64,000 nt of DNA from IMG/VR virus record IMGVR_UViG_3300013104_000001, positions 1 to 64,000 of that record; one strand, written 5' to 3'. The notes beneath the pieces were generated by a model, which searched no databases, had not been told where the DNA came from, and was given only the letters and a program-made list of their open reading frames with translations. The position numbers and the translations under genes are program-made. Position 1 is the stretch's first letter, and the number at the start of each line of letters is the position of its first letter. Positions 2,775 through 62,706 of the stretch are shown in pieces.

Positions 2775-2813
2775 ATAAGAAAGGGAGAGAGGTGACTTTC
2801 TCCCACTTATGCC
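2775..2813 (+). terminator. hairpin + TTATGCC element
   Basis: GGGAGAGAG-GTGA-CTTTCTCCC followed by CTTATGCC. Confidence 0.6.
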
Positions 2814-2841
2814 AATTAAATTTAACTCAGGAAAAGTAACC

Positions 2842-3252
2842 ATGAAGACCGGCTATTATTACGCTTTAGTCAAGAATCATTTCTCAGGGAAAAGAGAGAT
2901 CTTAAAGATTCAACGTGAAACCATCGCAGAACCGTTTGTAACGTGTTATACGCGCATGCACAAGGATATTGAGGAAAACCACAGCGGTAAGTACGAAACC
3001 TCGGCTCTGGCCTTTGGAGTGCTTAAAATCGAGTACTATACCAAAGACAAGATCGGCTCTGTCTGGATTGGGCACACAAAGGTGGGATTATTGACTACTG
3101 TACCGACATTGATCTCGGTAGGTGTTGATAGCCCCATTGAAACTTTCTTCTTATCGCCGCCTGCTAATATGCAGATGGGGGATCCTGAACTCATCGAGCT
3201 GCGTGATGCGGTATCCCTTCATATCGGCGATGCAACATGGGTAATGAAATGA
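2842..3252 (+). CDS. hypothetical protein (ORF track starts at 2809; ATG 2842 preferred)
   Basis: AGGAAA upstream of ATG 2842; the 2809 ATG lies inside the TTATGCC repeat motif. Confidence 0.65.
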   Translation: MKTGYYYALVKNHFSGKREILKIQRETIAEPFVTCYTRMHKDIEENHSGKYETSALAFGVLKIEYYTKDKIGSVWIGHTKVGLLTTVPTLISVGVDSPIETFFLSPPANMQMGDPELIELRDAVSLHIGDATWVMK

Positions 3253-3722
3253 GACGATTCTACGCACAGCCTGATGGCTTGTTTAATGTGTTTAAAGAAA
3301 GAGCGACCGTTACCATCAAAGATCGCTTAGATGACATCGATGAAGACATTCGTCGTGTTGTTATCGAACTTAATGAACTTAGTGGTGTGGCGCCGGTATG
3401 GAGTTGTGCTTCTCACCCAGAAACCAGAAAAGTATCTGATCGTAAGATGCATGTGATCTGTGCGGTAAATCAGGAAGGTGCCGAACAACTTGATCAGGTT
3501 TATCAGGAGTGGTCCACCCTGCTTGTTGATTACGGTATGTTCCATGTACCTAATCTAACTATCGCAAGACTGGTACACCCCGACTTTCCTTTCAATGAAT
3601 CGCTTACGACTAATGATCTGTATTACGCGGTTGAACTTAAGGTAAGTAACATTACTACCAAACGGTTCAAGCAAGCAATGTTGCTATCTTTAGAAGAAGC
3701 TATCCGTAACGTCTCATTTTAA
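3249..3722 (+). CDS. TYW3/Taw3-like motif protein, paralog 1
   Basis: IDEDIRRVVIELNELSGVAPVWSCASHP resembles the D-x2-I-x6-N-x8-SC-G/S-H/R N-terminal motif of TYW3-like proteins; ATGA overlap with upstream stop. Confidence 0.6.
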   Translation: MRRFYAQPDGLFNVFKERATVTIKDRLDDIDEDIRRVVIELNELSGVAPVWSCASHPETRKVSDRKMHVICAVNQEGAEQLDQVYQEWSTLLVDYGMFHVPNLTIARLVHPDFPFNESLTTNDLYYAVELKVSNITTKRFKQAMLLSLEEAIRNVSF

Positions 3723-3730
3723 GGTGATGT

Positions 3731-4249
3731 ATGTTTGATGTCGCAATTGAATCAGAAGAGACCCTGGGTTTCTTTAAACAACGCGCCGAGAAGACTTTGG
3801 CTAATGATCGAGAGTCAATAGATCAGGCTATTCTTCCGATAGTCGACTTATTGCAAACGTTCCCTGGGATAGCACCTGCCTGGAGCTGCGAGTCACATCC
3901 AGAAAAAGAACATCCCACTGATATCTACGTCACATGTGTTATAAATGAAACTGGTGCTGATCATATCCAAGCAATTTATAAAGCATGGTTATCAATCCTT
4001 GATAAACAACATCGATCCTACCCACAGCCAATTAAGGGATCGCCTGGCGAATATAAGTCACAACCCAATCCGTACTACGTCAATCCCTGGCAAGTGTTTA
4101 TTCGTATCAACCGTTTAACATGGCCACGTGATTTTAGTCGTAAGTACATGGTCGTCAAGATTGGTTATCACTGGACTACCTTAGTAAAGAAAGAACACGC
4201 GTTGAAAACATTTACTGACGCAATCAAAATCGTTAAAGAAAGTATTTAA
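3731..4249 (+). CDS. TYW3/Taw3-like motif protein, paralog 2
   Basis: IDQAILPIVDLLQTFPGIAPAWSCESHP; aligns with the upstream ORF along its length. Confidence 0.6.
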   Translation: MFDVAIESEETLGFFKQRAEKTLANDRESIDQAILPIVDLLQTFPGIAPAWSCESHPEKEHPTDIYVTCVINETGADHIQAIYKAWLSILDKQHRSYPQPIKGSPGEYKSQPNPYYVNPWQVFIRINRLTWPRDFSRKYMVVKIGYHWTTLVKKEHALKTFTDAIKIVKESI

Positions 4250-4250
4250 T

Positions 4251-4317
4251 CGGCATAACCCCCTGAGAGAGAAGCTTCGCGCTTCTCTCTCAGGGGTGCC
4301 GTGAATCTTTTTTTTTT
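4251..4317 (+). terminator. intrinsic terminator with CGGCA/TGCCG flanks
   Basis: 16-bp stem CCCCTGAGAGAGAAGC/GCTTCTCTCTCAGGGG, then T10 at 4308-4317. Confidence 0.85.
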
Positions 4318-4415
4318 GGTTTCATTTATCAAATTTAGAGTGAGTAACGAATAAAAGTTATATGGCCGGATGAGGGCTTGGGGATATAGTTTCAATTCTC
4401 AGGCTCGTGGCCTAC

Positions 4416-4455
4416 AAAAAAAAAAGGAGGAAGTAGCTTATCCAGTCACTTCCTC
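4416..4455 (-). terminator. intrinsic terminator for the helicase gene
   Basis: GAGGAAGT...ACTTCCTC stem; A10 at 4416-4425 is a U-tract on the minus strand. Confidence 0.75.
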
Positions 4456-4503
4456 AAAACGTTATTACTCAGTTGCTCCATAATGGAACATACTATTACG
4501 ACA

Positions 4504-6033
4504 TTAACCAAACCATGGAGCTGCGCCACCGTCTGCAAGCGTATCACCGCCGACGTGTTTGCGTGACTTATCTTTACCTGTGATATCGTCAAGGATACCT
4601 GCTGCTTCAAACTTATAAACACAATACTTATCGCGCTCAGGTGTAACCGAGATGGTACGATGCTTACCACGTTGAATACAGAGGTAGGCTTCTTCACCGA
4701 CACGCACGATATGGATAATCATCTCAACATCGACTTCTTGGTCGATCTTGGTACAGTTATCCCAATAACCTTTGTTTGCTGTTTCGCGCGGCAAGTCTTC
4801 TTCGAGACCATTACGCACGAGCATCTTCGCAGCAGGGCTAAGCTGATGCGGAGTGATAACACAAATACCACGGGCTGAGGTAAAGTTACGGACACGACGG
4901 AAGAGATCACGGTACTCTTGACCCGCTACACCTTTCTCGCAACCTTCTTTACTGAACATCCCCAGGTAATCGATCGTAAGAAGATGGATCTCATAACCCA
5001 TGTTCTCAAAGTTTTTAATACGCTCAAACAGATTACGGTAGCCGAACTGAGATGGGTTAACACGACAGAAGTTAACTTCATACCCGTTCACCGACAATGC
5101 CTTCATAACCTCTTGTGCCGCCACCGTTTCATCGATTGTCTGATGATCATGGTTTAAGCCATCGATGTTTGCCTTGATCTTCTTCCACCACAGAACCATG
5201 TTATCGGTCATGTTGTTTTCAGAAGAGATATGCATGATCATCGGTTTCTTCTTCGGATCACGCATGTAAGGTTTGTTGAAGGTTGCGATCTGACGAGTCA
5301 GGTCCATTGTGAAGCCTGTCTTGTTGTTGTGCTGCAATGCACCAATCAAAACAAACTCACTACGCCTGAAACCACCCACCTCACCCAGCATACGGTTGAT
5401 GCCGGTTAACCCTGTACGCAGAACACCAACTGTTGAAGACTCTTCTTTTGCCTGCTTGAAGATCTTACCAACTTCATCAAGGTTACTAACTGTAACTTCG
5501 GAGATCACCGCCGGGTCAAACTGTTCGGTCACACCGATGTTAACCGTTTCGATCTCTTCCAGCAGTTTAGTTACCGCAGAGTCCATATCAACATCTTCAC
5601 CACCAAACATGATTGGCGCTGCAAAACGTTTTACAATGGCTTTTGCACGACGATGCTGATCCCATTTGCGTAACTCACGGCTAATGGCAACAGTTGACTG
5701 ACGTGCACGGTACGGATCATCCTCGGTACTATTGACACCCATATCTAGAGCTTGGTAAGTCGCCGTGTCCTGGCCACAGTCGGTTAACAAGCGTTGAAGA
5801 AGGTCAGTTTTATCCAGAGGTTGGTTTTTAGGACGGTTGATCAAGAAGCGAATGGTACGACGTAACGCTAACTGCACACTGCGAGATTGGTCGTCACCAA
5901 TGCCTTCTACCGGCGCCGGGATGTTCTCAAGCAGCTCATCAATAAACTCACTACTGTCATCACTATCGGCACCTACGATGGACTCTTGGTAAAATAACGT
6001 AATAATCTTTATGAGTAATAGATTGGTATCCAT
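4504..6033 (-). CDS. DnaB-like replicative helicase (phiKZ gp118-like)
   Basis: LRTGLTGINRMLG, variant Walker A GALQHNNKTGF, Walker B LLTIDY, TPHQLS, QRGKHR; GAGGG before ATG 6033. Confidence 0.9.
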   Translation of the reverse strand: MDTNLLLIKIITLFYQESIVGADSDDSSEFIDELLENIPAPVEGIGDDQSRSVQLALRRTIRFLINRPKNQPLDKTDLLQRLLTDCGQDTATYQALDMGVNSTEDDPYRARQSTVAISRELRKWDQHRRAKAIVKRFAAPIMFGGEDVDMDSAVTKLLEEIETVNIGVTEQFDPAVISEVTVSNLDEVGKIFKQAKEESSTVGVLRTGLTGINRMLGEVGGFRRSEFVLIGALQHNNKTGFTMDLTRQIATFNKPYMRDPKKKPMIMHISSENNMTDNMVLWWKKIKANIDGLNHDHQTIDETVAAQEVMKALSVNGYEVNFCRVNPSQFGYRNLFERIKNFENMGYEIHLLTIDYLGMFSKEGCEKGVAGQEYRDLFRRVRNFTSARGICVITPHQLSPAAKMLVRNGLEEDLPRETANKGYWDNCTKIDQEVDVEMIIHIVRVGEEAYLCIQRGKHRTISVTPERDKYCVYKFEAAGILDDITGKDKSRKHVGGDTLADGGAAPWFG

Positions 6034-6060
6034 TATGCCCTCGTTATAAGGTGATTGACC

Positions 6061-6690
6061 ATGTACAATGAAAAGTTGGTAGTTGTGCCAGCGACGATCC
6101 TTCGGGCTATTCACAACGCCAAAGAAAGTGAAGCAATTTTAACGTGTCCTGAGAGAATGCTTTCCATACTATCAAGACGCGATGTCATTTTCTACTATAC
6201 TGTGAATGTGCTGCTTTGTGACACATCATATAAAGCAGACCCGAACAACCCAGAGCCGCCGTTAGTTTCGGCCCTGCGTGATTTGCTTTCACACACCATC
6301 GGAGTAATGAATGCATTTACCTCTCCGGCGTGGGTGAAGTTCGTTGATGATAATTCCGCGGATATTCGTGCTGAGCAGTCTTTAAAAGCGCGTAGTATCT
6401 ATGAGTACCTCACAGGTGAAACTTATACCTGGAACGCTGAACCTGGTGAAGACGATCTGAGTTATATCTATGACACCGCCGCGAAAGTGGTAGGTGGCGA
6501 TACAGTTGCTGTGTTTATCACCACGACACAATCAACCGACTCTTTCAATATCATCAGTCAGCAGCGTCTTTTTGAACAAACGCTTCAGGCATTCGCTACA
6601 CTGACGGCTGATACAAAGAACTTCTCTTCTTTGTGGACTGGCTTTTGTGAATTGATTTACCAGAACTCGTTGATCCGACGTTTTGGGTAA
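6061..6690 (+). CDS. hypothetical protein between helicase and major capsid gene
   Basis: ORF divergent from the helicase; position typical of a core virion-block gene. Confidence 0.7.
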   Translation: MYNEKLVVVPATILRAIHNAKESEAILTCPERMLSILSRRDVIFYYTVNVLLCDTSYKADPNNPEPPLVSALRDLLSHTIGVMNAFTSPAWVKFVDDNSADIRAEQSLKARSIYEYLTGETYTWNAEPGEDDLSYIYDTAAKVVGGDTVAVFITTTQSTDSFNIISQQRLFEQTLQAFATLTADTKNFSSLWTGFCELIYQNSLIRRFG

Positions 6691-6766
6691 GAATCTATGT
6701 AATAGTATGTAAATTGTCAGAACTGGCAGCATATTGTTATGACCGTGTGTTAGCGCGACACAACCC

Positions 6767-6818
6767 CCTTTCTATTAATATGTTAATAGAAAGGTTATAT
6801 CGAAAACTTATATAAGTT
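6767..6818. promoter_or_regulatory. palindromes in the major capsid gene leader
   Basis: Perfect 12-bp inverted repeat CCTTTCTATTAA-TATG-TTAATAGAAAGG (6767-6794) and perfect 14-bp palindrome AACTTATATAAGTT (6805-6818). Confidence 0.55.
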
Positions 6819-6837
6819 ATTTGAAGGAAACGAGAAC

Positions 6838-9144
6838 ATGGCTTTGAAACTTCTGCATACTTCGCAAAATGCCGATATGCTGTCACGCATTCAGTCCCGC
6901 ATCAACGGTGGCCAGTTTGCCGGTAACACCGAAGTCGTTAAAGGCTTCGGTATGGAGTCAATTGACTCTGTACGCCAAGGCGCCATCGATACTGCCCTTA
7001 AGAGCGGTGTTGAACTGCTGGTAGACGTGCTGCGTGAAGGCACTGTTAACCAGGGTGCTCAGTACATCCAGGGTACTGGCGTTGAAGGTTACTCTGAAGC
7101 ACAGCTGAACGCTGCCGCTATCGCGATGACCATCGGTAACGACACCCAAGCGTACGCTTCTGCACTGAAAAGTGCTGCAGCACGCGCAGCATCAATGTCT
7201 GACCTGGCGCTGGTATCTGGTAGCCGTTACGGCTCTGCCAATATCAAACAGGGTTACGGTACCGAAGCGTTCGAACAGGCACAGTCTTTCGTGCCACAGC
7301 AGAACGCAACGATCGAATACAACCTGAAAGCGGCTAAGCAGGATGCCGTTGGTGAAGCCTTCTTCCCAACCACTACCCTGACCCCGAACGACATCGGCCT
7401 GAGCGTAACTGTTCCGGTTGACATCGTTGAACCGTTTATCAAGCACAAAGCAAATGGCGAAGTGACGGATTGGCAGCGTAAGAAGCTCATTAACGCAATG
7501 CGTGACCCGACCATCCTGCGTAACGATGCGATCAAACTGGTTCCTTACAAACCTGCTGACGGTTCTGCCAACAGCAACTTCTCTACCGTTGTCCCAGCGT
7601 TCACTGAACTGCAGGGCGGCGAGCTGGTGCCATCAGGCGCACTGAAACCAGGTCTGAAAATCGGCTTCATGGGTCTGTGCTCAACTCCTTCACTGGTTCA
7701 GGCTGGTGCACTGGAGTCTTCTGACCAGATCGATACCGGTACTCGCCTGCAGTACATCTGGATCGAAGTGGCTAACGCTTCTGGTACCAAAGAGCTGTTC
7801 CGTCTGCGCACTGACCACCTGGATCGTTCTACTTTCCAGAAATCTCAGGAAGGCGATAAGTTCGAGACGTCTCTGGACCTCTCTAACGTTACCATCGGCC
7901 TGAACGAGCTGACCAAAACTGTTGACAACACTGACTCTGCTCTGTTGGCTCCACTGGTCACTGGCGGTCAGCAAGCGATCCTGGCGCTGGATATCAAAGG
8001 TACTCTGAACCACGAGAAAGGTTCTGTTGTTGTTGGTGGTCTGACTCAGCCTACCATCACTCGTATCTACGATACCGTTGCTAAAGAAGAGATGAACGTC
8101 AAGTCTGGCGCACTGAAAGATGCGATCGACGGCCTGACCCTGACCTTCGTTGGCTACCAGCTGCGTGCTAACCTGCGTAACAGCAACTTCCGTACTCGCG
8201 AACAGCGTGTTGACCGTCAGACTTCCGTGTACAAGTACATGGTACAGCTGGGCGCGCCAATCACTGCTATCGCCCCGGCAACTGACGCGTGGGGCCCGAA
8301 AGAGTCTATCGCTGTTGAAACTCTGAGCAATGCGACCTACGCACGTAACTCCGCAATGGCTATCAGCCGTCTGCTGGACTACGTTGAAACCATCCGTGAT
8401 GCGGGTGTGACCAATAACGGCCTGTGGCAGCGTTACGATGAGAACAGCATCGAAGGCGTTGGTAAAGCAGTTGTTGATCCATGGTACGGTGAAGGTTCTT
8501 ACGACATCTCTAAAACTGTGAACGGCGTTAAGTCTTCTCAGACCCGTGATGACGTTTCTGAAAAGATCCTGAACATCCTGCGTACCTACGCGTACCGCAT
8601 GAACGCAGAGTCTGGCTACAACGTTGCGCTGCAGATGCTGTACAACGAAGTAACTCCAACTCTGGTTATCGCAACCGACAACATCATCGCTCAGTACCTG
8701 ATGGAAGTTGGTGACCTCCGCACTGCTGGTATCAGCTTCAAAGTGCACGTGGCCACTACCAACAACATCGAAATGCGCGGTAAGATTCTGATGACCCTCT
8801 CTCGCATGAAAGCGGGCGGTCTGGATCTGTTGACTTTCGGTATGCACCTGTGGGTTCCTGAGATCGTAGCAACTGTTAACGTAATGCGTAACGGTACCTA
8901 CATCGAAGAAACCATGGTACAGCCGCGTAACCTGCATGTTGTTGTTTGCCCGATCATCGCGAACATCACCATCACTGGTCTGGAAGAAGCTTACACTGGC
9001 AAGATCACTATCGCTGCAGATATCATCAGCGAGCCAGAAGCTGCAGGTACCCAAGACCTGGGCGGCCTGAACACCACTCCAGCTAACGGTACTACCGCGC
9101 CTACCGGCACTGGTACTACTGCTAACGGCGGTGCAGGTAGCTAA
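6838..9144 (+). CDS. major capsid protein precursor (phiKZ gp120-like)
   Basis: 768 aa, strongly biased codons, AFFPT, DPTILRN, HLWVPE...VQPRNLHV..CPI motifs; G-x-E sites in the N-terminal propeptide; AAGGA RBS. Confidence 0.88.
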   Translation: MALKLLHTSQNADMLSRIQSRINGGQFAGNTEVVKGFGMESIDSVRQGAIDTALKSGVELLVDVLREGTVNQGAQYIQGTGVEGYSEAQLNAAAIAMTIGNDTQAYASALKSAAARAASMSDLALVSGSRYGSANIKQGYGTEAFEQAQSFVPQQNATIEYNLKAAKQDAVGEAFFPTTTLTPNDIGLSVTVPVDIVEPFIKHKANGEVTDWQRKKLINAMRDPTILRNDAIKLVPYKPADGSANSNFSTVVPAFTELQGGELVPSGALKPGLKIGFMGLCSTPSLVQAGALESSDQIDTGTRLQYIWIEVANASGTKELFRLRTDHLDRSTFQKSQEGDKFETSLDLSNVTIGLNELTKTVDNTDSALLAPLVTGGQQAILALDIKGTLNHEKGSVVVGGLTQPTITRIYDTVAKEEMNVKSGALKDAIDGLTLTFVGYQLRANLRNSNFRTREQRVDRQTSVYKYMVQLGAPITAIAPATDAWGPKESIAVETLSNATYARNSAMAISRLLDYVETIRDAGVTNNGLWQRYDENSIEGVGKAVVDPWYGEGSYDISKTVNGVKSSQTRDDVSEKILNILRTYAYRMNAESGYNVALQMLYNEVTPTLVIATDNIIAQYLMEVGDLRTAGISFKVHVATTNNIEMRGKILMTLSRMKAGGLDLLTFGMHLWVPEIVATVNVMRNGTYIEETMVQPRNLHVVVCPIIANITITGLEEAYTGKITIAADIISEPEAAGTQDLGGLNTTPANGTTAPTGTGTTANGGAGS

Positions 9145-9179
9145 TCCGCAAGGATAACTACCTAGTTAGTATTTACTAA

Positions 9180-9220
9180 CATAAATGAGGAGGGGCGAAA
9201 GCTCCTCCTCTTATGCCGTC
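9180..9220 (+). terminator. hairpin + TTATGCCG element
   Basis: GAGGAGGGGC-GAAA-GCTCCTCCTC-TTATGCCGTC directly after the capsid gene. Confidence 0.8.
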
Positions 9221-9234
9221 TAAATTTTTATAAA

Positions 9235-9244
9235 CCTACATTAC
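9235..9244 (+). promoter_or_regulatory. candidate phage promoter CCTACATTAC
   Basis: Identical 10-mer also at 41900 and 50378, each after a T-rich tract and upstream of a gene; resembles the phiKZ early TATATTAC box. Confidence 0.55.
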
Positions 9245-9308
9245 TAAGGTGATGCAATAGTAACGCTAATGTTTAGTTGGAGCATTGTATCATGACGGGG
9301 TTAGGTTT

Positions 9309-10307
9309 ATGTCTCATGACCATCAATTCAACGAGGTGTCAAGCCAAGCGCACTTCAACTATGATTCAGATTGTAAGATAAGTTATTTCATTAAGTCAGA
9401 ATTGAGATCACCCTTGGTAGTCCGTCATCGAAGTGGCATGGATAACGTAATCCCTGGTAAGATGTTTGGCGGGGGTGTCTCTAATCGTGTAGAAATCATG
9501 CTCGAGTTTCAAGTTAAAGAGCAAGTATTTCTCGACATTAATAGTAAATCAATTGAGGAGCTGCCGCCTGAATACGCCGTGATAGCAAAATCTATCGGGG
9601 CTATCAGAGAACGTCGTGTGAGGGAAATGGGTAATTACTTCGTTGGTAGAGTGATGTACACATTCACGCAAGATTACTTTGATCGCTTTGATGGGACGTT
9701 CTATTTCTCTGTATTGGATATGGTGTTGTCAACCAATCAGATCGAAGAAACAGAACTGCATCCTTACTCTGTACATGCAAAGCAACAATCCATGGCAGAG
9801 AAAATAAAGGACGATTATGCTGGCTTAGTGACTTATGCAGTAAAGCTGGTAGATTCGCAGATGCAATTAGGCCCAAAATACATAAACATCGGAGGTGATG
9901 TTTTTGAGCTTATACCCACCGAAGGAACCGGGACCGAATCAGCTGACGGTCTCTACTTCATCGGTGACAGTCCAGTGACACGGCCTAACCGTAATAGACG
10001 GGATAGTCGTACTCGATTCATTCCCATGGATAAAATTGTAGCGAACCCTGATCAGTATGGATTGTATCCGACTATTGGTGAGGCGCGACATCGTGGGGAT
10101 AAACAATTGGATGCGGCTTATAATGCATTGGATGTTGCAAAAGGGAAGGAAAGGAAGGCGCAGGAGAAGATAGCTCAACTGGAAACTCAGATTGAGGGAT
10201 TCAAGGCAAAAGAGAAACAGGACAACAGTATGGTTCTCAACAAAGGGATAACGGAGCTCATCAAACTCGTAACCGCTACGATCGGTATTGTTAAACTCTT
10301 GAGGTAA
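9309..10307 (+). CDS. conserved hypothetical protein preceding the RNAP subunit (start 9285 or 9309)
   Basis: Long ORF with C-terminal coiled coil and hydrophobic end; matches the gene slot between capsid and RNAP genes in phiKZ-like phages. Confidence 0.75.
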   Translation: MSHDHQFNEVSSQAHFNYDSDCKISYFIKSELRSPLVVRHRSGMDNVIPGKMFGGGVSNRVEIMLEFQVKEQVFLDINSKSIEELPPEYAVIAKSIGAIRERRVREMGNYFVGRVMYTFTQDYFDRFDGTFYFSVLDMVLSTNQIEETELHPYSVHAKQQSMAEKIKDDYAGLVTYAVKLVDSQMQLGPKYINIGGDVFELIPTEGTGTESADGLYFIGDSPVTRPNRNRRDSRTRFIPMDKIVANPDQYGLYPTIGEARHRGDKQLDAAYNALDVAKGKERKAQEKIAQLETQIEGFKAKEKQDNSMVLNKGITELIKLVTATIGIVKLLR

Positions 10308-10311
10308 CTCA

Positions 10312-12000
10312 ATGGACCCGTTGCTCGAAACCGCCATAAAGAACATTGTGCCATGGATGAATCCAGACATTAGTAATGGATTCGTAAAACGTGAGTTGGA
10401 TAAAGCGTTGGAATTTCTCAACAACGTCTTCCATAGCGCGTTTGGCAGTCTGGGGTCAAATATAAAGTACGTAGGGTACAGTCGTTGTCGGCCTGATGAA
10501 GAGTATCGCTTTAGCCTGAAAAGGAATGGCGGGACTACAGCTTCAAAGGCGCGTTATGAATTAGCCAGATCTGATGTGTTCCTGGTGAAGTTCAATTTCA
10601 CGATCGATAATAAACCAACCAAACCACTGCTGCTCTATATACCGTATTGTGATGATACGGGGCTGATGCATTTGCGCGGGACAGCGCACACCATCACGCC
10701 GGTGTTGGAAGACCCGGGAATCTCGGTGACTCGAGATGGTTGTTTCTTCCGCGTGACTTGTGACAAGATCGTTGTGAAGCGAACTGGTCACACCATCTGT
10801 CGTGATGTGGTTGATATCACACAGAAACGTACACGCATCCAGAAACATATCAACATCCCGTGGAGTAAGATCTATCGTCCTAAGCAACAGAAGGCAAACT
10901 CTGCAAAGACAGCGCCGGTGACATCCCTCCCTCACTATCTGTTTGCAAAGTACGGTGTGACGTATACCTTTAAGAAGTATGCGGGTGTGGACATCGTGTA
11001 TGGTTCTGAGCTGGATATCACAGCAGAGAACTATCCTGATAAAGAGTGGACACGTTTCTACTCGGCTAAACAAACTCACCCAAACAACAAGCGTCCTTCT
11101 CAGGAATGGGTACCAACGTCTGCTGCGTTAGCGGTCAGAACAAACAACCCCACTCCGATTATTGACATCCTTGTTGCAGGCTACTTCTATGTCGCCGACT
11201 GTTACACCCATGAATTCAATCCGATGCACTCTGATGAACCAGATCACTGGCGTCTGATGATGGGTAAGATGGTCTTCAACAAAACGGTTAAGTATGTACA
11301 GATGACGGAGTATCTCTCTCCACACTTTGCATCGCTTGATACGTATTTGGACGACATCGCAAAAGAGAACCTGGCTAACGAAGGCGTGTTATGTGAAGAC
11401 ATCTATGAACTGATGTCCTATCTCATTTCCAACCTGGATTATCTGATCAATACCGTTAACCTGGCAAGCATGTATAATAAAAAGTTAGTTGTACTGCCAT
11501 ACGTGCTGTCACCGATCATCCACGGTATCTTCTATACCAAGTTCAATCTGATGCAACAATGCAAGAAACGGGCTATTGACACGACCACCGGGGAAGAAGT
11601 AATGGTGTTCAGTGAGGATACGTTGTTTGACGTCCTAGGCCGTAACTTGAAGCCAGAAGCGATTAACAAAGTGAAAGGGCCAGACCATGGCATGATTAGC
11701 TCTGTAGCCGCACCTGGTGACAATAAGATGTTTAAGATAAATAATAAGATCACACTACAGCAGAACGCAACACAATCAGGTGGACGACGCAACGAGTCTC
11801 CAATGACCGATGAGTCGAAAGGATTGGATGTGAGTATCGCTGACTGCGGTTCTTATCTCCACGTAACCAAACCGGATCCAACTGGTCGATCGCTAATTAA
11901 CCCTTTTAAAATGCTGGTCAATGATAAGTTCCTGCCGTCGAAGGTTCACGAAGAACTCTTCAATAACGTGCAGAGCATTATTACACGCCGCAATATTTAA
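10312..12000 (+). CDS. non-virion RNA polymerase beta-type subunit, N-terminal part (phiKZ gp123-like)
   Basis: TPVLEDPGISVT, HYLFAKYG, PDPTGRSLINP motifs; 562 aa; position downstream of the capsid gene. Confidence 0.8.
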   Translation: MDPLLETAIKNIVPWMNPDISNGFVKRELDKALEFLNNVFHSAFGSLGSNIKYVGYSRCRPDEEYRFSLKRNGGTTASKARYELARSDVFLVKFNFTIDNKPTKPLLLYIPYCDDTGLMHLRGTAHTITPVLEDPGISVTRDGCFFRVTCDKIVVKRTGHTICRDVVDITQKRTRIQKHINIPWSKIYRPKQQKANSAKTAPVTSLPHYLFAKYGVTYTFKKYAGVDIVYGSELDITAENYPDKEWTRFYSAKQTHPNNKRPSQEWVPTSAALAVRTNNPTPIIDILVAGYFYVADCYTHEFNPMHSDEPDHWRLMMGKMVFNKTVKYVQMTEYLSPHFASLDTYLDDIAKENLANEGVLCEDIYELMSYLISNLDYLINTVNLASMYNKKLVVLPYVLSPIIHGIFYTKFNLMQQCKKRAIDTTTGEEVMVFSEDTLFDVLGRNLKPEAINKVKGPDHGMISSVAAPGDNKMFKINNKITLQQNATQSGGRRNESPMTDESKGLDVSIADCGSYLHVTKPDPTGRSLINPFKMLVNDKFLPSKVHEELFNNVQSIITRRNI

Positions 12001-12149
12001 TGAGCCTACATCATGAAATTGTCAACAGACTTGTTTGTACCGATTCATGATCCAACGTCGACAAAGCCCGTGCAGCCGCGCTTGTAAGTTAAGTCGAATA
12101 ATTACCACTTTGTAGAACAGATCGTTTTGATCTGTAAAAGGAAACCGTT

Positions 12150-14675: not shown

Positions 14676-14710
14676 CATAAGGAGGAGGGCTTCGGTCCTC
14701 CTTTATGCCG
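14676..14710 (+). terminator. hairpin + TTATGCCG element
   Basis: CATAA-GGAGGAGGGC-TTCG-GTCCTCCT-TTATGCCG. Confidence 0.75.
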
Positions 14711-14716
14711 CCTATC

Positions 14717-15019
14717 ATGCAACTACTGCACAGTAACGTAAGAGAGCGCTTCAGCGCGTGTATAACCGCTTCTTCAGCAAAAGCATACAAAGACATCATT
14801 GCTGACGTTTGGCACGCGTTAGATGCCACACGTTTGCTCAAACCCTATCGTATGATCTTGATATTAAAAGGTGATATCATTCACGTGGTTTACGATACCA
14901 CTCTAGGGCATGAGTACACATTTGATATTCCACCCTTTGCCGATATTAAGGAAAGCTTCGAACGTAGCAACATAACAACGCAAACTTTCTTTAACGCAGC
15001 AACTAACTCTAAACAGTGA
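14717..15019 (+). CDS. hypothetical protein
   Basis: ORF track 14705 start lies in the repeat motif; next in-frame ATG at 14717. Confidence 0.55.
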   Translation: MQLLHSNVRERFSACITASSAKAYKDIIADVWHALDATRLLKPYRMILILKGDIIHVVYDTTLGHEYTFDIPPFADIKESFERSNITTQTFFNAATNSKQ

Positions 15020-15025
15020 GGTACT

Positions 15026-15199
15026 ATGACAAGAAGTATAGCAACCGGTCCTAAACGTGTTATGCGATCTGTAGGAAATGTAAGACCTGAAACTGTGCAC
15101 ATTCGTGCAAGTCTTAAGCTGGTTAGCGGATCATGGGTAGTTATCCCACCGACACCAAAGCTCATTGAACAAGACTATGGCATCCCACGCATACATTAA
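15026..15199 (+). CDS. small hypothetical protein (57 aa), not in the ORF track
   Basis: GAGGT RBS 5 nt before ATG 15026; MTRSIATGPKRVMRSVG...YGIPRIH; stops just before a terminator. Confidence 0.6.
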   Translation: MTRSIATGPKRVMRSVGNVRPETVHIRASLKLVSGSWVVIPPTPKLIEQDYGIPRIH

Positions 15200-15200
15200 C

Positions 15201-15261
15201 CGGCATAAGAGGAGATCTCCCATGACGGGAGATCTCCTCTGCTATGCTTCTTTTTTTTTTT
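15201..15261. terminator. bidirectional terminator between convergent genes
   Basis: CGGCATA-AGAGGAGATCTCCC-ATGAC-GGGAGATCTCCTCT-GCTATGC then T11. Confidence 0.85.
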
Positions 15262-15264
15262 GGT

Positions 15265-18156: not shown

Positions 18157-18188
18157 TTTAAAGAGGCTCCTTGCAGTGGGAGAATAGC

Positions 18189-20567: not shown

Positions 20568-20575
20568 TCGATCAT

Positions 20576-20597
20576 GAGGGGGCTTGCCTAGCCCCTC
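20576..20597 (+). terminator. intergenic hairpin
   Basis: GAGGGGGC...GCCCCTC stem after the stop at 20567. Confidence 0.45.
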
Positions 20598-20603
20598 AAA
20601 AGT

Positions 20604-20612
20604 AATCCTATG
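20604..20612 (+). promoter_or_regulatory. candidate late promoter AATCCTATG
   Basis: TATG is the phiKZ late-promoter core; related motifs at 6692, 27400, 50264, 58464. Confidence 0.4.
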
Positions 20613-20644
20613 TTTACACCGCCTCTACGCCTAAGGAGAAACAC

Positions 20645-25300: not shown

Positions 25301-25354
25301 CGGCATAAAGACAGAGAGCTTCCTTGCGGAGGCCCTCTGTCTTGTTTTATGCCG
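25301..25354. terminator. bidirectional CGGCATAA...TTATGCCG element
   Basis: Long imperfect stem closed by CGGCATAA/TTATGCCG between convergent genes. Confidence 0.8.
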
Positions 25355-33241: not shown

Positions 33242-33269
33242 GGGAGGGGGAAACCCCTCCTTTTATTTT
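33242..33269 (+). terminator. hairpin with U-rich tail
   Basis: GGAGGGG-GAAA-CCCCTCC-TTTTATTTT. Confidence 0.7.
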
Positions 33270-33282
33270 GAAAGGAGTTGTC

Positions 33283-36315: not shown

Positions 36316-36360
36316 CAGCATAAGGAGAGGGCGATTGCCCTCTCCTCTATGCCGTCTTTT
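36316..36360. terminator. bidirectional GCATA...TATGCCG element
   Basis: CAGCATAAGGAGAGGGC-GATT-GCCCTCTCCTC-TATGCCGTCTTTT between convergent genes. Confidence 0.8.
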
Positions 36361-40090: not shown

Positions 40091-40114
40091 GGGGAGGGCA
40101 ACCTCCCCTTTATG
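40091..40114 (+). terminator. hairpin + TTTATG element
   Basis: GGGGAGG-GCAA-CCTCCCC-TTTATG. Confidence 0.65.
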
Positions 40115-40125
40115 AGGGCTTTGCT

Positions 40126-41899: not shown

Positions 41900-41909
41900 C
41901 CTACATTAC
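41900..41909 (+). promoter_or_regulatory. candidate phage promoter CCTACATTAC
   Basis: Second copy; 27 nt upstream of ATG 41937. Confidence 0.55.
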
Positions 41910-44419: not shown

Positions 44420-44450
44420 TTTCGTACATAGATCACTGATAATATAGTTT

Positions 44451-44489
44451 AGGAGAAGCGCAGGCTTCTCCTGCTATGCCGTCTTTTTT
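44451..44489 (+). terminator. hairpin + TATGCCG element
   Basis: AGGAGAAGC-GCAG-GCTTCTCCT-GC-TATGCCGTCTTTTTT. Confidence 0.8.
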
Positions 44490-50377: not shown

Positions 50378-50387
50378 CCTACATTAC
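50378..50387 (+). promoter_or_regulatory. candidate phage promoter CCTACATTAC
   Basis: Third copy; 39 nt upstream of ATG 50427. Confidence 0.55.
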
Positions 50388-50714: not shown

Positions 50715-50755
50715 TAGAGAGTCCTTCGGGGCTCTCTTATGCCGTCTTGTTTTTA
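50711..50755 (+). terminator. hairpin + TTATGCCG element
   Basis: AGAGAGTCC-TTCG-GGGCTCTCT-TATGCCGTCTTGTTTTT. Confidence 0.8.
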
Positions 50756-50808
50756 CGAACTAAATCGCGTCATCTTTTAGCAGATTCATTTATCAAAGGA
50801 AATTAATC

Positions 50809-54588: not shown

Positions 54589-54615
54589 CCGACACCGGAC
54601 AGGGATGTCCTTTTA

Positions 54616-54975: not shown

Positions 54976-54985
54976 GGAATCTAAA

Positions 54986-55514: not shown

Positions 55515-55528
55515 AAGAGATAATTAAA

Positions 55529-56854: not shown

Positions 56855-56863
56855 GGTTACACT

Positions 56864-58102: not shown

Positions 58103-58104
58103 TC

Positions 58105-58425: not shown

Positions 58426-58430
58426 ACTAT

Positions 58431-58459
58431 AGGAGGACTTCGGTCCTCCTTTTATGTCG
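58431..58459 (+). terminator. hairpin + TTATGTCG element
   Basis: AGGAGGAC-TTCG-GTCCTCCT-TTTATGTCG. Confidence 0.75.
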
Positions 58460-58551
58460 ACCAAATCCTATATAACACGACAGGACATCTGCACCCGCAA
58501 TCGCCATCAATTTGGTTCCTGTTTTGGACAATACGATTATTGGGAGACAGT

Positions 58552-59499: not shown

Positions 59500-59503
59500 C
59501 CTG

Positions 59504-59529
59504 GGCAGGGGAAACCCTGCCTTTATGCC
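59504..59529 (+). terminator. hairpin + TTATGCC element
   Basis: GGCAGGG-GAAA-CCCTGCC-TTTATGCC. Confidence 0.75.
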
Positions 59530-59548
59530 ATCCAAGAGGAAATTAACC

Positions 59549-60382: not shown

Positions 60383-60398
60383 GCGGGGCTGATCTTTC

Positions 60399-61400
60399 AT
60401 GGCACAAGTTGTCGAATTAAAAGATGGGATGAATCACCATCCCGCTCATCCAGGTATCTGGGTTCCGTACACTGGTTGGCGTCTCAAAGACCGTTATGAT
60501 ATCAAGCTGAAGACTGGTGAGGTCTGGCGGTATTACTATCCTAACGGGGGATCGTTTGCTAAATGGACATCTGATCATGAAGGTCCCGATCGGGTTGAAG
60601 ATGATGAGATTGCTGAAATCCGTCAGATGCTCGATGAAGAAATCACTGAAGAGTATTACTTCAAAGGCAAGGACCGTCTAGACCGTAATGTGAAAATGTT
60701 TGGTGATGTGCTACCAACAGTTAACATTGCTGAAGATGGTACGGTAACCTTCACACCGATCAAGCGTCGTATCTTTGATGACTGGGTATTGAGCACCTGG
60801 AGCGGCGAAGAAGCGATGTGGTTGCATGTGAATGAACTCTCTGTTGAGGAACTCAAAACACAACTGAGCGAACGTCACAACGACATCGAACCAAATACTG
60901 ATCTGGGTGATAGCCTGCGGTCTTACCTCAATGTACTGTGCAAGAAGGCTAACCACACCGATGCGCATGTGCAGGTTGCCTGGAAGACCAGTACGCTGCC
61001 ATTTAACCTGGAGTCGCCAACGGATTATCAGCCGGCGGTATGTCTGTGTGCAGTTAAGACACTGGAAGAGATGGCTGCAATCCAGATTGAGAAAGATCGT
61101 GTTGAGCAGGTTGAAGCCAATCGTATTGCTAGCTTAGGTTTCACACCTACTGGTAAGGCGATGCGCCGTCGTGTTGCAGTATCTGCACTTGCAGCACACA
61201 TGACCACCCCGCACCTGCATCGTGCGATTGATCGTAAGGTGTCAGGCGGTGGCAAGAACGAGAAGGATGGTCGTTTTGTCACCAAGTCCGAAATGCGTTC
61301 AGTGGACGGTAAGAAACTGACCGGTAAACAGCTGCGTAAGATGCAAAAGAAAATGCGTCAAGCAGAACGTGATAAGGTGGTGGTCGATGGAACTGAATAA
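60399..61400 (+). CDS. hypothetical protein with basic C-terminal tail
   Basis: 333 aa; K/R-rich last 70 aa. Confidence 0.75.
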   Translation: MAQVVELKDGMNHHPAHPGIWVPYTGWRLKDRYDIKLKTGEVWRYYYPNGGSFAKWTSDHEGPDRVEDDEIAEIRQMLDEEITEEYYFKGKDRLDRNVKMFGDVLPTVNIAEDGTVTFTPIKRRIFDDWVLSTWSGEEAMWLHVNELSVEELKTQLSERHNDIEPNTDLGDSLRSYLNVLCKKANHTDAHVQVAWKTSTLPFNLESPTDYQPAVCLCAVKTLEEMAAIQIEKDRVEQVEANRIASLGFTPTGKAMRRRVAVSALAAHMTTPHLHRAIDRKVSGGGKNEKDGRFVTKSEMRSVDGKKLTGKQLRKMQKKMRQAERDKVVVDGTE

Positions 61401-61812
61401 GCTCTACGCACTCTCCCCGGAAACGATGATGGCATTGGAAGATCCTCGTCATGAGTTAGTGGCTGGTATTACGGGTGAACTTATCTTTACTCTGTCACGG
61501 ACTGTAGGGCCTGGGTTACATCCTAAGTTCGGCTTACATGCCTATGTCATGCCAAGTGGCTATGGTGTGTTTGATGAGCAGTTCACTTGCCGTGCTGTAA
61601 TGAACCTTGATGATCTGCGCAGCATCGACACTAGAGACGAAGTCTCCATGGTGTTCCAGGGATGGAAGTCTGGCGATATGGTTAAAGTCACAGGTCCGAT
61701 CGGTTGGTCAGTGAAATCATTAGAAGCTGTTAAACTCGTCGAAACCTTCAGTATCGAACTCTTCCTACGGGATACGGTAGAAGGAATCGTGACCAAAGTA
61801 GATGTGCAGTAA
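61387..61812 (+). CDS. hypothetical protein
   Basis: GGTGG before ATG 61387; overlaps the upstream stop. Confidence 0.65.
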   Translation: MELNKLYALSPETMMALEDPRHELVAGITGELIFTLSRTVGPGLHPKFGLHAYVMPSGYGVFDEQFTCRAVMNLDDLRSIDTRDEVSMVFQGWKSGDMVKVTGPIGWSVKSLEAVKLVETFSIELFLRDTVEGIVTKVDVQ

Positions 61813-61814
61813 TT

Positions 61815-62048
61815 ATGGATACCAGTAACATCTATAAAGTCTACGAAAAAGATCCACTGCCACACGTGGATCGTATAGCAATTGTTATAGCCAAGTCAGC
61901 CCAGGAAGCCATTGATCTCTTTGTAAAGGATGTTAATGATAATCTGCCATTAAACCGTGGCGCTGAATTGACAGCAGTTTGCTATATCGGACATGAAGTT
62001 CCTTCTCGTGTTCTATCCTGGTATATTTGTGGTTATGGAGATCATTAA
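61815..62048 (+). CDS. small hypothetical protein
   Basis: IYKVY...IVIAKSAQEAIDL motif. Confidence 0.65.
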   Translation: MDTSNIYKVYEKDPLPHVDRIAIVIAKSAQEAIDLFVKDVNDNLPLNRGAELTAVCYIGHEVPSRVLSWYICGYGDH

Positions 62049-62371
62049 TGCCCAGCAATGTAATCGAACCTTTTCATGTAAATGAAGAACGTGCTGTCGC
62101 GTGGTATATCGCAAATGATGCCGATCATGCTCGCGAACAGTATTTGCACTTCGTTGAAGATTTCAGCCATCGTGGTGTTTCTGAAGGCGAAGACCAGTGG
62201 GATACCGTGCACGAAGAAGCAGAACTGGCTGATCAAGAATACCCGTTGATCATTGCGTTCTATCTTAACTTTGATCACGCTGATCGGCATGAAGCATTGG
62301 TCGCTCCGCTTGGTGCGGCTATCGGCATCACCCCTCCTGAGCTTGTCGCTCATTATCAATTAACCAAGTAA
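62048..62371 (+). CDS. hypothetical acidic protein
   Basis: GGAG RBS; coupled to the upstream stop. Confidence 0.65.
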   Translation: MPSNVIEPFHVNEERAVAWYIANDADHAREQYLHFVEDFSHRGVSEGEDQWDTVHEEAELADQEYPLIIAFYLNFDHADRHEALVAPLGAAIGITPPELVAHYQLTK

Positions 62372-62381
62372 GGATAATATC

Positions 62382-62672
62382 ATGGCCTTTGCCCTTGATG
62401 CAAAACTCGTTCCATTCCTGTTCAAAACAAAAGATGGTCGTCTGTACGCTAATGTGTCTGGCGGTAACAAAACCAAACTGGTCATCTCAATGGACCAGGG
62501 CCTGACTCAAGAGTTAGGTGCGCCTGCACAGGACGTTCCACTCGAAGCGCGTGTCAATGGCACGAAGCTGTACTTCAGTCCACAAGGCGAAGTGACAGGC
62601 TGGGATATCCCTGAGAAGAAAGTAGCTGACGCAGCTACTGCCGGTTCGATGAACATGCGTCGTCCAGGCTAA
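62382..62672 (+). CDS. hypothetical protein
   Basis: AAGGA RBS. Confidence 0.7.
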   Translation: MAFALDAKLVPFLFKTKDGRLYANVSGGNKTKLVISMDQGLTQELGAPAQDVPLEARVNGTKLYFSPQGEVTGWDIPEKKVADAATAGSMNMRRPG

Positions 62673-62680
62673 TCCATGCG

Positions 62681-62706
62681 GGGAGGGGAAACCCTCCCTT
62701 ATGCCG
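62681..62706 (+). terminator. hairpin + TTATGCCG element
   Basis: GGGAGGG-GAAA-CCCTCCC-TTATGCCG. Confidence 0.8.

What the first reader, a model, noticed from the sequence alone, without database searches (positions are those of the whole stretch)
2775..62706. Dispersed hairpin + (T)TATGCCG element whose polarity follows transcription
Seen: a purine-arm/pyrimidine-arm hairpin, often with a GNRA or UUCG loop, is followed by TATGCC(G) at 2808, 9212, 14704, 25348, 36348, 44475, 50738, 59524 and 62700, with variants at 15243, 40111 and 58453. The hairpin sequences differ but the tail is conserved, and several copies lack a proper U-tract. The reverse complement (C/G)GCATA appears on the 5' side at all four convergent gene junctions (4251, 15201, 25301, 36316), and ATTTAATCGGCATAA is identical at 4244 and 25294; co-directional copies carry at most a CATAA remnant. 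Inference: this is a strand-specific sequence signal for termination or 3'-end processing by the phage's own multisubunit RNA polymerases, conceptually like the sequence-specific class II terminator of T7 RNAP. TATG is also the phiKZ late-promoter core, so terminator-promoter fusion is an alternative, but at convergent junctions that would produce antisense RNA.
Basis: partly seen in the sequence, partly recalled or inferred. Interest (0 to 1): 0.8.

Follow-up and report, generated by a model that had tools for sequence, protein, structure and literature searches.

The report
phiKZ-type hairpin-plus-TTATGCCG transcription terminators
The dispersed hairpin followed by TTATGCCG is real and strongly non-random, but it is the conserved transcription-terminator motif already mapped in the giant phages phiKZ and 201phi2-1, found here in an uncultivated Erwinia-phage-like relative.

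Summary
The window is the first 64 kb of a 287-kb IMG/VR jumbo-phage contig. It is about 75% identical in DNA to the Erwinia Agricanvirus phages, which are phiKZ-like. It carries 12 TATGCCG; 10 lie 0-4 nt after a stable intergenic hairpin, always downstream of a gene read in that direction. All four convergent junctions carry the motif, three of them on both strands.

In the relative Deimos-Minion, TATGCCG is about 24 times denser in intergenic than in coding DNA. It is the commonest 7-mer after strong hairpins, and 17 of 18 annotated convergent junctions carry it.

Across eight capsid-gene orthologues the hairpin sequence changes completely while T(T)TATGCCG does not change.

The tail matches the published phiKZ terminator consensus (stem-loop + YTTATKYYGT). 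All eight published 201phi2-1 termination sites that I placed on that genome fall 8 nt after the stem, 1-2 nt after TATG. So the tail occupies the place of the U-tract.

Promoter-only, start-codon and stem-extension readings fail at convergent junctions.

Verdict: new member of a known kind. The analogy to the T7 class II terminator and the specificity for the phage's own RNA polymerases are not. Why the tail shares TATG with the late-promoter core remains open.

The parts
2783..2814 (+). Terminator: hairpin 2783-2804, spacer ACT, tail TATGCCA 2808-2814. It follows the + gene ending at 2774.
   Evidence: -16.5 kcal/mol, z -3.9
4251..4317 (.). Bidirectional terminator at a convergent junction: hairpin 4260-4296. 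On the minus strand the tail is TATGCCG (4257 to 4251). On the plus strand the tail is a TGCCGT variant followed by a run of 10 T.
   Evidence: -41.2 kcal/mol, z -8.8
9187..9221 (+). Terminator after the major head gene (6838-9144): hairpin 9187-9210, T, tail TATGCCG 9212-9218, then TCT.
   Evidence: Orthologues in eight loci keep the tail. A contig from a run the tool guesses to be RNA (X25, from a relative) ends at 9218.
14680..14710 (+). Terminator: hairpin 14680-14703, tail TATGCCG 14704-14710. A mirror CATAA lies upstream.
15201..15260 (.). Bidirectional terminator at a convergent junction: hairpin 15208-15240. Minus-strand tail TATGCCG (15207 to 15201). Plus-strand tail TATGCTT 15243-15249, then a T-run.
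   Evidence: -32.3 kcal/mol
25301..25354 (.). Bidirectional terminator at a convergent junction: hairpin 25308-25343. Minus-strand tail TATGCCG (25307 to 25301). Plus-strand tail TATGCCG 25348-25354.
   Evidence: -33.3 kcal/mol, z -7.9
33242..33270 (+). Terminator with a degenerate tail: hairpin 33242-33261 followed by TTTATTTTG. This fits TTATKYYG with K and Y = T.
   Evidence: consensus from PMC10914365
36316..36354 (.). Bidirectional terminator at a convergent junction: hairpin 36323-36346. Minus-strand tail TATGCTG (36322 to 36316). Plus-strand tail TATGCCG 36348-36354.
   Evidence: -26.3 kcal/mol
40091..40117 (+). Terminator variant: hairpin 40091-40108, TT, tail TATGAGG 40111-40117.
44450..44481 (+). 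Terminator: hairpin 44450-44473, C, tail TATGCCG 44475-44481, then TCTTTTTT.
50716..50744 (+). Terminator: hairpin 50716-50737, tail TATGCCG 50738-50744.
58431..58459 (+). Terminator variant: hairpin 58431-58450, TT, tail TATGTCG 58453-58459. TATGTCG is the commonest phiKZ/Psa21 form.
59503..59530 (+). Terminator: hairpin 59503-59522, T, tail TATGCCA 59524-59530. The real start of the next gene is at 59549.
62680..62706 (+). Terminator: hairpin 62680-62699, tail TATGCCG 62700-62706.
10312..12000 (+). Context gene: a member of the phiKZ gp123 family. This is the beta-like subunit of the non-virion RNA polymerase (nvRNAP) that reads TATG at late promoters in phiKZ.
   Evidence: 26% identity over the full length to the syntenic PA7 protein, E 4e-50; phrog_2943 'polymerase', E 8e-191; the syntenic 201phi2-1 gp203 is annotated 'similar to phiKZ gp123'; PMC12809450

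Best explanation
These are the standard transcription terminators of a phiKZ-like (chimallivirus) jumbo phage.

Proposed mechanism:
1. A GC-rich RNA hairpin forms.
2. It is followed at 0-4 nt by the tail (Y)TTATGCC|G(T). The tail occupies the place of the U-tract of a bacterial intrinsic terminator.
3. By homology with mapped sites in 201phi2-1, the transcript ends about 8 nt after the stem, at the C(C) just before the conserved G.
4. Inferred: the proximal UUAU supplies the weak RNA:DNA pairs next to the hairpin.
5. Inferred: a pyrimidine 3' end followed by an incoming G resembles the consensus pause of multisubunit RNA polymerases. This would hold the polymerase at the right distance for the hairpin to release the RNA.
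6. At convergent junctions one hairpin carries a tail on each strand and stops transcription from both sides.

Shown here: the anatomy, the enrichment, the orientation, the conservation and the homology to the mapped motif.

Inferred: the exact 3' end in this phage, and the roles of UUAU and of the pyrimidine/G step.
For: 1. Anatomy and enrichment in the window.

2. Genome-wide in Deimos-Minion:
- TATGCCG density is 2.37 per kb in intergenic DNA against 0.097 per kb in coding DNA.
- It is the top 7-mer after strong hairpins.
- 31 of 97 hairpins at gene 3' ends carry the tail, against 4 of 281 inside genes (P 2e-16).

3. Orientation:
- Of the 72 hairpin+TATGC elements that lie outside genes, 62 lie downstream of a gene on the same strand.
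- 17 of 18 annotated convergent junctions carry it, 11 on both strands, against about 12% of co-directional junctions.

4. The tail profile is the same at co-directional (n=37) and convergent (n=36) sites: T before TATG in 92% and 81%, C at position 6 in 89% and 64%, G at position 7 in 68% and 81%. Single-mismatch variants cluster at positions 6-7, not in TATGC.

5. In eight capsid-gene orthologues (64-100% protein identity) the hairpins are entirely different but T(T)TATGCCG is invariant.

6. Literature:
- phiKZ has 61 terminators with the consensus stem-loop + YTTATKYYGT (PMC10914365).
- 201phi2-1 motif A has n=59 (PMC11512511).

7. All eight published strong termination sites of 201phi2-1 fall 8 nt after the stem, 1-2 nt after TAT(G/A).

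8. A 3.2-kb contig of depth 18 from X25, a run the tool guesses to be RNA and that comes from a relative, spans 5995-9218. It ends at the last base of the capsid terminator's TATGCCG. The next contig has depth 5.

9. Divergent junctions carry no hairpin+TATGCCG.
Against: - No 3'-end mapping exists for this phage. The X25 run is only guessed to be RNA, its contigs carry no direction, and contig ends are imprecise; the other end of the same contig, at 5995, matches no obvious start site.
- ONT-cappable-seq and reporter assays cannot separate termination from 3' processing.
- A GCC-containing tail makes a stronger RNA:DNA hybrid than a U-tract, so the release mechanism is not explained by the canonical model.
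- The stem-arm polarity is the reverse of the phiKZ consensus.
- The near-invariance of TATG, which is identical to the late-promoter core, is more than a degenerate U-tract would need.
Confidence: 0.8

Rival explanations
1. Terminator-promoter fusion. The hairpin terminates the upstream unit, and the TATG directly after it is a late promoter of the non-virion RNA polymerase with G as +1. Each element would both end one transcript and start the next.
For: - TATG with G as +1 is the essential core of phiKZ late promoters (PMC4666361). It is bound by the gp123 subunit (PMC12809450), and this phage encodes a homologue of that subunit.
- At co-directional sites, start codons with ribosome-binding sites lie 15-90 nt downstream.
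- TATGC is the most constrained part of the tail.
Against: - The tail is as frequent and as well conserved at convergent junctions, where it would drive antisense RNA into the facing gene. 17 of 18 convergent junctions carry it in Deimos-Minion.
- Divergent junctions lack it.
- The validated promoter P119L has no hairpin and no CCG.
- The conserved TATGs upstream of the capsid gene have a different context, AATAGTATGT(A/T)A, and no hairpin.
- The phiKZ tail tolerates T in place of G (consensus K), a change that inactivates the promoter.
- Contig depth drops from 18 to 5 across 9218.
Confidence: 0.12
2. RNA 3'-processing or stability element. Transcripts read through and are then cut at the tail by a host or phage ribonuclease. 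The hairpin protects the new 3' end.
For: - Mapped 3' ends cannot distinguish termination from processing (PMC10914365).
- The tail is sequence-conserved beyond what a weak hybrid requires.
- Relatives encode a ribonuclease (Deimos-Minion gp152).
Against: - The constant 8-nt distance from the stem in eight of eight sites is the classic termination geometry.
- The homologous elements block downstream reporter expression in uninfected cells.
- No cleavage consensus that I know of matches UUAUGCCG.
Confidence: 0.05
3. A DNA-level palindromic site, for a binding protein, for recombination, or as a dispersed repeat, that merely sits between genes.
For: - CGGCATA...TATGCCG is an inverted repeat at convergent junctions.
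- Some copies are near-identical at different loci in Deimos-Minion, for example 96812 and 172677.
Against: - At most co-directional sites only the downstream half is present. A clear upstream CATA(A) appears in about 2 of 9 copies in the window and about 4-7 of 31 in Deimos-Minion.
- Orientation follows the upstream gene.
- The distance between the two halves varies from 18 to 37 nt with the hairpin.
- Rfam and the repeat search give nothing else.
Confidence: 0.03

Closest known systems
Conserved phiKZ / 201phi2-1 terminator motif (stem-loop + 5'-YTTATKYYGT-3'; Putzeys et al. 2024, PMC10914365; motif A of PMC11512511)
   Same: - A GC-rich hairpin is followed immediately by TTATG(C/T)(C/T)G(T).
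- The elements are dispersed through the genome at the ends of transcription units, and some are bidirectional at convergent genes.
- The host genome is a phiKZ-like phage with its own multisubunit RNA polymerases.
- I saw the same tail in PA7, 201phi2-1, Psa21, RP12 and pEa_SNUABM_48.
   Different: - The 5' arm here is purine-rich (79%) and the 3' arm pyrimidine-rich. This is the reverse of the phiKZ consensus CCYCCCC...GGGRRGG.
- K is fixed as G and YY is mostly CC.
- Downstream, TCT is often followed by a T-run.
- There is no RNA-end mapping for this phage.
Canonical bacterial intrinsic (Rho-independent) terminator
   Same: - Hairpin-dependent.
- The 3' end lies about 8 nt after the stem in the mapped relatives.
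- It can be bidirectional.
- The homologous 201phi2-1 elements work with host RNA polymerase in reporters.
   Different: - There is no U-tract: only 3 of the 8 tail bases are T and the distal half is GCCG.
- A hairpin-plus-T-run scan does not detect these elements.
- Only 2 of 26 hairpins at gene 3' ends in the window have a T-rich tail.
phiKZ late promoter (5'-TATG-3', G = +1; Yakunina et al. 2015, PMC4666361)
   Same: The same four bases, read on the same (non-template) strand and in the same orientation relative to downstream genes.
   Different: - The promoter P119L has an AT-rich upstream region, no hairpin and no CCG.
- The tail occurs at convergent junctions and is absent from divergent ones.
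T7 RNA polymerase class II (sequence-specific) terminator and the consensus elemental pause (pyrimidine at -1, G at +1) of multisubunit RNA polymerases. Both are recalled from my own knowledge and were not retrieved here.
   Same: - A short conserved sequence contributes to where the polymerase stops.
- The mapped 3' end (a pyrimidine) followed by a conserved G fits a -1 pyrimidine / +1 G pause.
   Different: - Class II termination needs no hairpin and belongs to a single-subunit polymerase.
- Here the hairpin is essentially always present and the polymerases are multisubunit.

Membership tests
phiKZ-type conserved terminator (Putzeys 2024) | Stable GC-rich stem-loop | tested here: met
   -14 to -41 kcal/mol, z -1.7 to -8.8..
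phiKZ-type conserved terminator (Putzeys 2024) | Tail YTTATKYYGT directly 3' of the stem | tested here: met
   the consensus is YTTATGCCG(N)YT, with a spacer of 0-4 nt. The same tail is seen in the phiKZ-like phage PA7.
phiKZ-type conserved terminator (Putzeys 2024) | Lies at gene or operon 3' ends in the direction of transcription; bidirectional copies occur between convergent genes | tested here: met
   Four of four convergent junctions in the window and 17 of 18 in Deimos-Minion carry it.
phiKZ-type conserved terminator (Putzeys 2024) | RNA 3' ends map at the motif | tested here: inconclusive
   No stranded reads exist for this phage. A contig from a relative ends at 9218. In 201phi2-1, eight of eight published termination sites lie 8 nt after the stem.
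phiKZ-type conserved terminator (Putzeys 2024) | C-rich 5' arm and G-rich 3' arm (CCYCCCC...GGGRRGG) | tested here: not met
   the 5' arm is 79% purine. Arm polarity differs between lineages, so I treat it as a lineage trait and not as a requirement.
phiKZ-type conserved terminator (Putzeys 2024) | The genome encodes phiKZ-like multisubunit RNA polymerases | tested here: met
   (gp123-family subunit at 10312-12000). The relative's annotation lists several RNA polymerase beta-subunit genes.
Canonical intrinsic terminator | U-tract (at least 5-6 U within about 8 nt after the stem) | tested here: not met
   none of the motif-bearing terminators between 1 and 20000 is detected in the sense direction; 2 of 26.
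T7 class II terminator | Works without a hairpin; conserved ATCTGTT-type sequence; single-subunit polymerase | tested here: not met
   10 of the 12 TATGCCG copies follow a hairpin; the two in coding DNA, without one, look like chance. The polymerases are multisubunit.
phiKZ late promoter | TATG with G = +1, located upstream of late genes, and primary 5' ends at G | tested here: inconclusive
   TATG is present. The context differs from P119L and from the capsid-upstream TATGs. Its presence at convergent junctions argues against a promoter. 5' ends cannot be tested here.

The most novel reading that the evidence does not exclude
The tail is more than a substitute for a U-tract. The non-virion RNA polymerase would read the non-template TATG during elongation with the same beta-lobe pocket that reads it at late promoters. 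The same four bases would then trigger pausing or termination after a hairpin, or let the polymerase restart without leaving the DNA. This would explain why hairpin+TATG is kept across chimalliviruses of Pseudomonas, Ralstonia, Erwinia and Serratia. It would also bear on the open question of what, besides TATG, defines a late promoter.
Probability: 0.15. Interest if true: 0.75.

Novelty: new member of a known kind. Interest (0 to 1): 0.35.

Why it matters
- For annotation: hairpin+TTATGCCG can be used to delimit transcription units in Agricanvirus-like jumbo phages. Standard terminator finders miss these elements.
- For mechanism: a terminator tail without a U-tract is conserved across phages that use their own very divergent multisubunit RNA polymerases. 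Its core is the same four bases as the late promoter. Neither of the two papers that describe the motif, in the parts I read, comments on this coincidence.
- The coincidence is cheap to test in vitro with the purified phiKZ enzymes.
- The element itself has already been described, so the finding extends known biology; it does not open new ground.

Tried and rejected
1. Start-codon artefact. The ATG of TATG is the mechanical ORF start at 2808, 14704 and 62700. Rejected: at 2808 and 62700 a start with a ribosome-binding site lies downstream, and copies at convergent junctions face no gene.

2. Stem extension, with the tail pairing to an upstream CATAA. RNAfold does pair them in about half of the folded examples. 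However, most co-directional copies lack the complement, so pairing is not the function.

3. Tail TATG held in the gp123 pocket at the moment of release. The mapped 3' end is 2 nt past the G, so TATG would sit about 4 nt upstream of its promoter register. The geometry does not fit, but the idea is not excluded.

4. Weak hybrid from the pyrimidine-rich 3' arm as a general rule. Rejected because phiKZ has the opposite arm polarity and other relatives have mixed arms.

5. RNA evidence.
- Both run searches gave only Logan contigs from relatives, or unrelated runs with the same species label.
- The single read-laying run gave contig ends only.

6. Papers and databases.
- Supplementary tables of both ONT-cappable-seq papers are not held.
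- Ceyssens 2014 is not held.
- Rfam gave no match in the window.

7. My own tools.
- My first hairpin detectors were too permissive and were replaced by energy-filtered ones.
- My ORF caller over-calls minus-strand ORFs in Deimos-Minion: 34 convergent junctions against 18 annotated. I therefore took the junction count from the RefSeq annotation.

8. Breadth. The sampling is only about 42 kb per genome (22-35 kb for two of them), so absences in SPN3US and Vibrio phage Yong XC31 are provisional.

Full report
**What the window is**

The window equals bases 1-64000 of IMG/VR contig IMGVR_UViG_3300013104_000001, which is 287,406 nt long. A rhizosphere metagenome run holds it completely.

Megablast finds only Erwinia Agricanvirus jumbo phages (Deimos-Minion, RAY, Ea35-70 and others), at about 75% DNA identity. 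The major head protein (6838-9144) is 84-86% identical to theirs and 25-31% identical to those of Goslar, phiKZ-like phages, 201phi2-1, RP12 and SPN3US.

The ORF at 10312-12000 is a full-length, syntenic homologue of the phiKZ gp123-family subunit of the non-virion RNA polymerase, or nvRNAP. So this is an uncultivated phiKZ-like (chimallivirus) phage that presumably transcribes its genome with its own multisubunit RNA polymerases.

**Checking the observation**

- TATGCCG occurs 12 times against 6.3 expected. TATGCC alone is at expectation.
- The signal is positional. Ten of the twelve follow an intergenic hairpin at 0-4 nt. The other two (31799 minus, 40598 plus) lie in coding DNA with no hairpin.
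- Starting from hairpins and not from the motif: among the 88 hairpins of -11 kcal/mol or better on both strands, TATG, ATGC and TTAT are the commonest 4-mers in the 0-4 nt after the stem, and TATGCCG is the commonest 7-mer. The chance of 8 of 12 motif copies landing there is about 1e-17.
- Hairpins just downstream of a same-strand stop codon carry the TATG tail in 10 of 24 cases. Hairpins inside genes carry it in 2 of 54.
- The folds are stable and mostly far better than shuffles.
- A conventional scan for a hairpin plus a T-run finds none of the motif-bearing terminators between 1 and 20000 in the sense direction. Overall it returns no more hits than shuffled sequence. This confirms that the elements lack a proper U-tract.

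- A purine-rich 5' arm with a pyrimidine-rich 3' arm reads the same on both strands. Only the tail is strand-specific.
- The ATG inside TATG is not the real start codon. At 2808 and 62700 the mechanical ORF starts there, but a start with a ribosome-binding site lies about 20-30 nt downstream.

**Genome-wide test in a relative**

I fetched the whole Deimos-Minion genome, 273.5 kb.

- TATGCCG is 2.37 per kb in intergenic DNA and 0.097 per kb in coding DNA. The window gives nearly the same figures, 2.37 and 0.082.
- It is again the top 7-mer after strong hairpins.
- 31 of 97 hairpins at gene 3' ends carry the tail, against 4 of 281 inside genes (P 2e-16).
- Of the 72 hairpin+TATGC elements outside genes, 62 lie downstream of a gene on the same strand. 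Several of the rest follow short annotated genes that my ORF caller missed.
- Using the RefSeq annotation, 17 of 18 convergent junctions carry the element, 11 of them on both strands. Only about 12% of co-directional junctions carry it.
- In the window, all four convergent junctions carry it and no divergent junction does.

**Anatomy of the tail**

The tail profile is the same at co-directional (n=37) and convergent (n=36) sites:

| Position | Co-directional | Convergent |
|---|---|---|
| T before TATG | 92% | 81% |
| C at position 6 of TATGCCG | 89% | 64% |
| G at position 7 | 68% | 81% |

The next base is variable, and a pyrimidine-T follows. Single-mismatch variants fall almost only at positions 6 and 7. 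Stem-to-TATG spacing is 0-4 nt, mostly 0 or 1.

**Conservation across relatives**

Downstream of the capsid gene, eight IMG/VR relatives span 64-100% capsid identity. They have three completely different hairpins, and not all have the purine-then-pyrimidine arm order. Yet every one continues with T(T)TATGCCG. Ten orthologous junctions between the window and Deimos-Minion behave the same way.

**What is already known**

ONT-cappable-seq of phiKZ found a conserved motif in 61 terminators: a stem-loop followed by a TTAT region, with consensus BCCYCCCCHWWDGGGRRGGBYTTATKYYGT (PMC10914365). Motif A of 201phi2-1 (n=59) is said to resemble it strongly (PMC11512511).

The 201phi2-1 paper prints the genome coordinates of eight strong termination sites. 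I placed all eight on EU197055.1. Each lies exactly 8 nt after the end of the stem and 1-2 nt after TAT(G/A):

- TTTATGT[T]GT
- TTTATGA[C]GT
- TTTATGC[T]GT
- TTTATGC[C]GT
- TTTATAC[C]GC
- TTTATGC[C]GC
- TTATATG[C]CG
- AATATGT[T]GT

The bracketed base is the published termination site. So the tail is the last stretch of RNA made. It stands where a U-tract would stand, and the conserved G(T) lies just past the release point.

The same paper reports that these terminators work in reporter constructs in uninfected P. chlororaphis. The signal is therefore not exclusive to the phage polymerases.

**RNA evidence for this lineage**

The evidence is thin. The two run searches gave no stranded reads.

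One run that the tool guesses to be RNA (X25) comes from a relative about 90% identical to the window. It holds a 3,219-nt contig of depth 18 that spans 5995-9218. That contig ends on the last base of the capsid terminator's TATGCCG, which is 8 nt after the stem. The neighbouring contigs have depth about 5.

This agrees with termination there, but contig ends are imprecise. The other end of the same contig matches no obvious start site.

**Promoter alternative**

TATG with G as +1 is the essential core of phiKZ late promoters (PMC4666361). It is bound by gp123 (PMC12809450). The arguments against a promoter reading are:

- The validated promoter P119L has no upstream hairpin and continues TAGACAG, not CCG.
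- In this clade the conserved TATGs upstream of the capsid gene sit in AATAGTATGT(A/T)A and ACTGTTATGACC contexts, without hairpins.
- The tail is most frequent exactly where a promoter would be harmful, at convergent junctions. It is absent where only promoters are expected, at divergent junctions.
- The phiKZ tail tolerates T in place of G, a change that abolishes promoter activity.

I therefore give a dual terminator-promoter role low but non-zero weight.

**Breadth**

I sampled about 42 kb around the capsid gene of ten other genera (22-35 kb for two of them).

| Phage | Hairpins at gene 3' ends with the given tail |
|---|---|
| PA7 | TAT[GT]YYG in 2 of 13 |
| 201phi2-1 | TAT[GT]YYG in 2 of 14 |
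| Psa21 | TAT[GT]YYG in 5 of 16 |
| RP12 | TAT[GT]YYG in 2 of 21 |
| pEa_SNUABM_48 | TAT[GT]YYG in 2 of 9 |
| Moabite | TATG in 4 of 10, with no TAT[GT]YYG tail |
| PCH45 | TATG in 2 of 16, with no TAT[GT]YYG tail |
| Goslar | TATG in 1 of 9, with no TAT[GT]YYG tail |
| SPN3US | none (0 of 12); T-rich tails in 3 of 12 |
| Vibrio phage Yong XC31 | none (0 of 10); T-rich tails in 3 of 10 |

The samples are small.

**Mechanism and verdict**

The best-supported reading is a hairpin-dependent terminator of the known phiKZ type. Its 8-nt tail replaces the U-tract.

I infer, but have not shown, two things:

- UUAU provides the weak pairs next to the hairpin.
- A pyrimidine 3' end before an incoming G acts as a pause. 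This rests on the consensus pause of multisubunit polymerases, recalled from my own knowledge.

Why the tail keeps exactly TATG is unexplained. It is the one point with some novelty potential.

It is a new member of a known kind, not a new kind of element.

Noticed in passing
window 9235-9244, 41900-41909, 50378-50387; also L022, L025, L027, L028 downstream of the capsid terminator: CCTACATTAC occurs three times exactly in the window. It is also conserved about 20-60 nt downstream of the capsid-gene terminator in relatives. It looks like a promoter element for the next gene and ends in TTAC, like the phiKZ middle-promoter motif.
   Followed up: partly
window 6701-6710 and 6735-6746; minus strand 4497-4488: AATAGTATGT and ACTGTTATGACC upstream of the major head gene are conserved in all eight capsid loci; AATAGTATGT is also present in Moabite. 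They are late-promoter-type TATGs without a hairpin.
   Followed up: partly
window 6805-6818: A perfect palindrome, AACTTATATAAGTT, lies in the 5' leader of the major head gene. It is unique in the window, conserved in seven of the eight capsid loci (one change in L027), and nearly conserved in Goslar. It may be a translational or regulatory operator.
   Followed up: no
window 4250-4503: This is a 254-nt gap without a convincing ORF. On one side is the hairpin+TATGCCG terminator; on the other is a canonical hairpin + T10 terminator (4427-4455, minus strand). A promoter-like AATAGTATGT lies on the minus strand at its start. A 234-nt contig from run X25 covers about 4267-4493. This may be a small non-coding transcription unit.
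   Followed up: no
L001 (Deimos-Minion) 11346-11352, minus strand; window orthologue 20568-20644: One hairpin+TATGCCG in Deimos-Minion points against both flanking genes (the gp7/gp8 junction). The window's orthologous junction has the hairpin but not that tail.
   Followed up: no
window 1-20000: Sigma-70-type promoter matches are fewer than in shuffles (21 against 31.4). This is consistent with a phage that does not use the host polymerase.
   Followed up: no
L002 46772-46812 and L004 22637-22677 (Deimos-Minion 96772-96812 and 172637-172677): Two terminators at distant loci are identical over at least 40 nt, including the flank upstream of the hairpin. Several others share the stem AGGAGAGGGC...GCCCTCTCCT. 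This suggests copying or gene conversion of terminator cassettes.
   Followed up: no
window 4321-4333 and 50785-50797: TTCATTTATCAAA recurs about 25-50 nt downstream of two terminators (repeat family D18).
   Followed up: no
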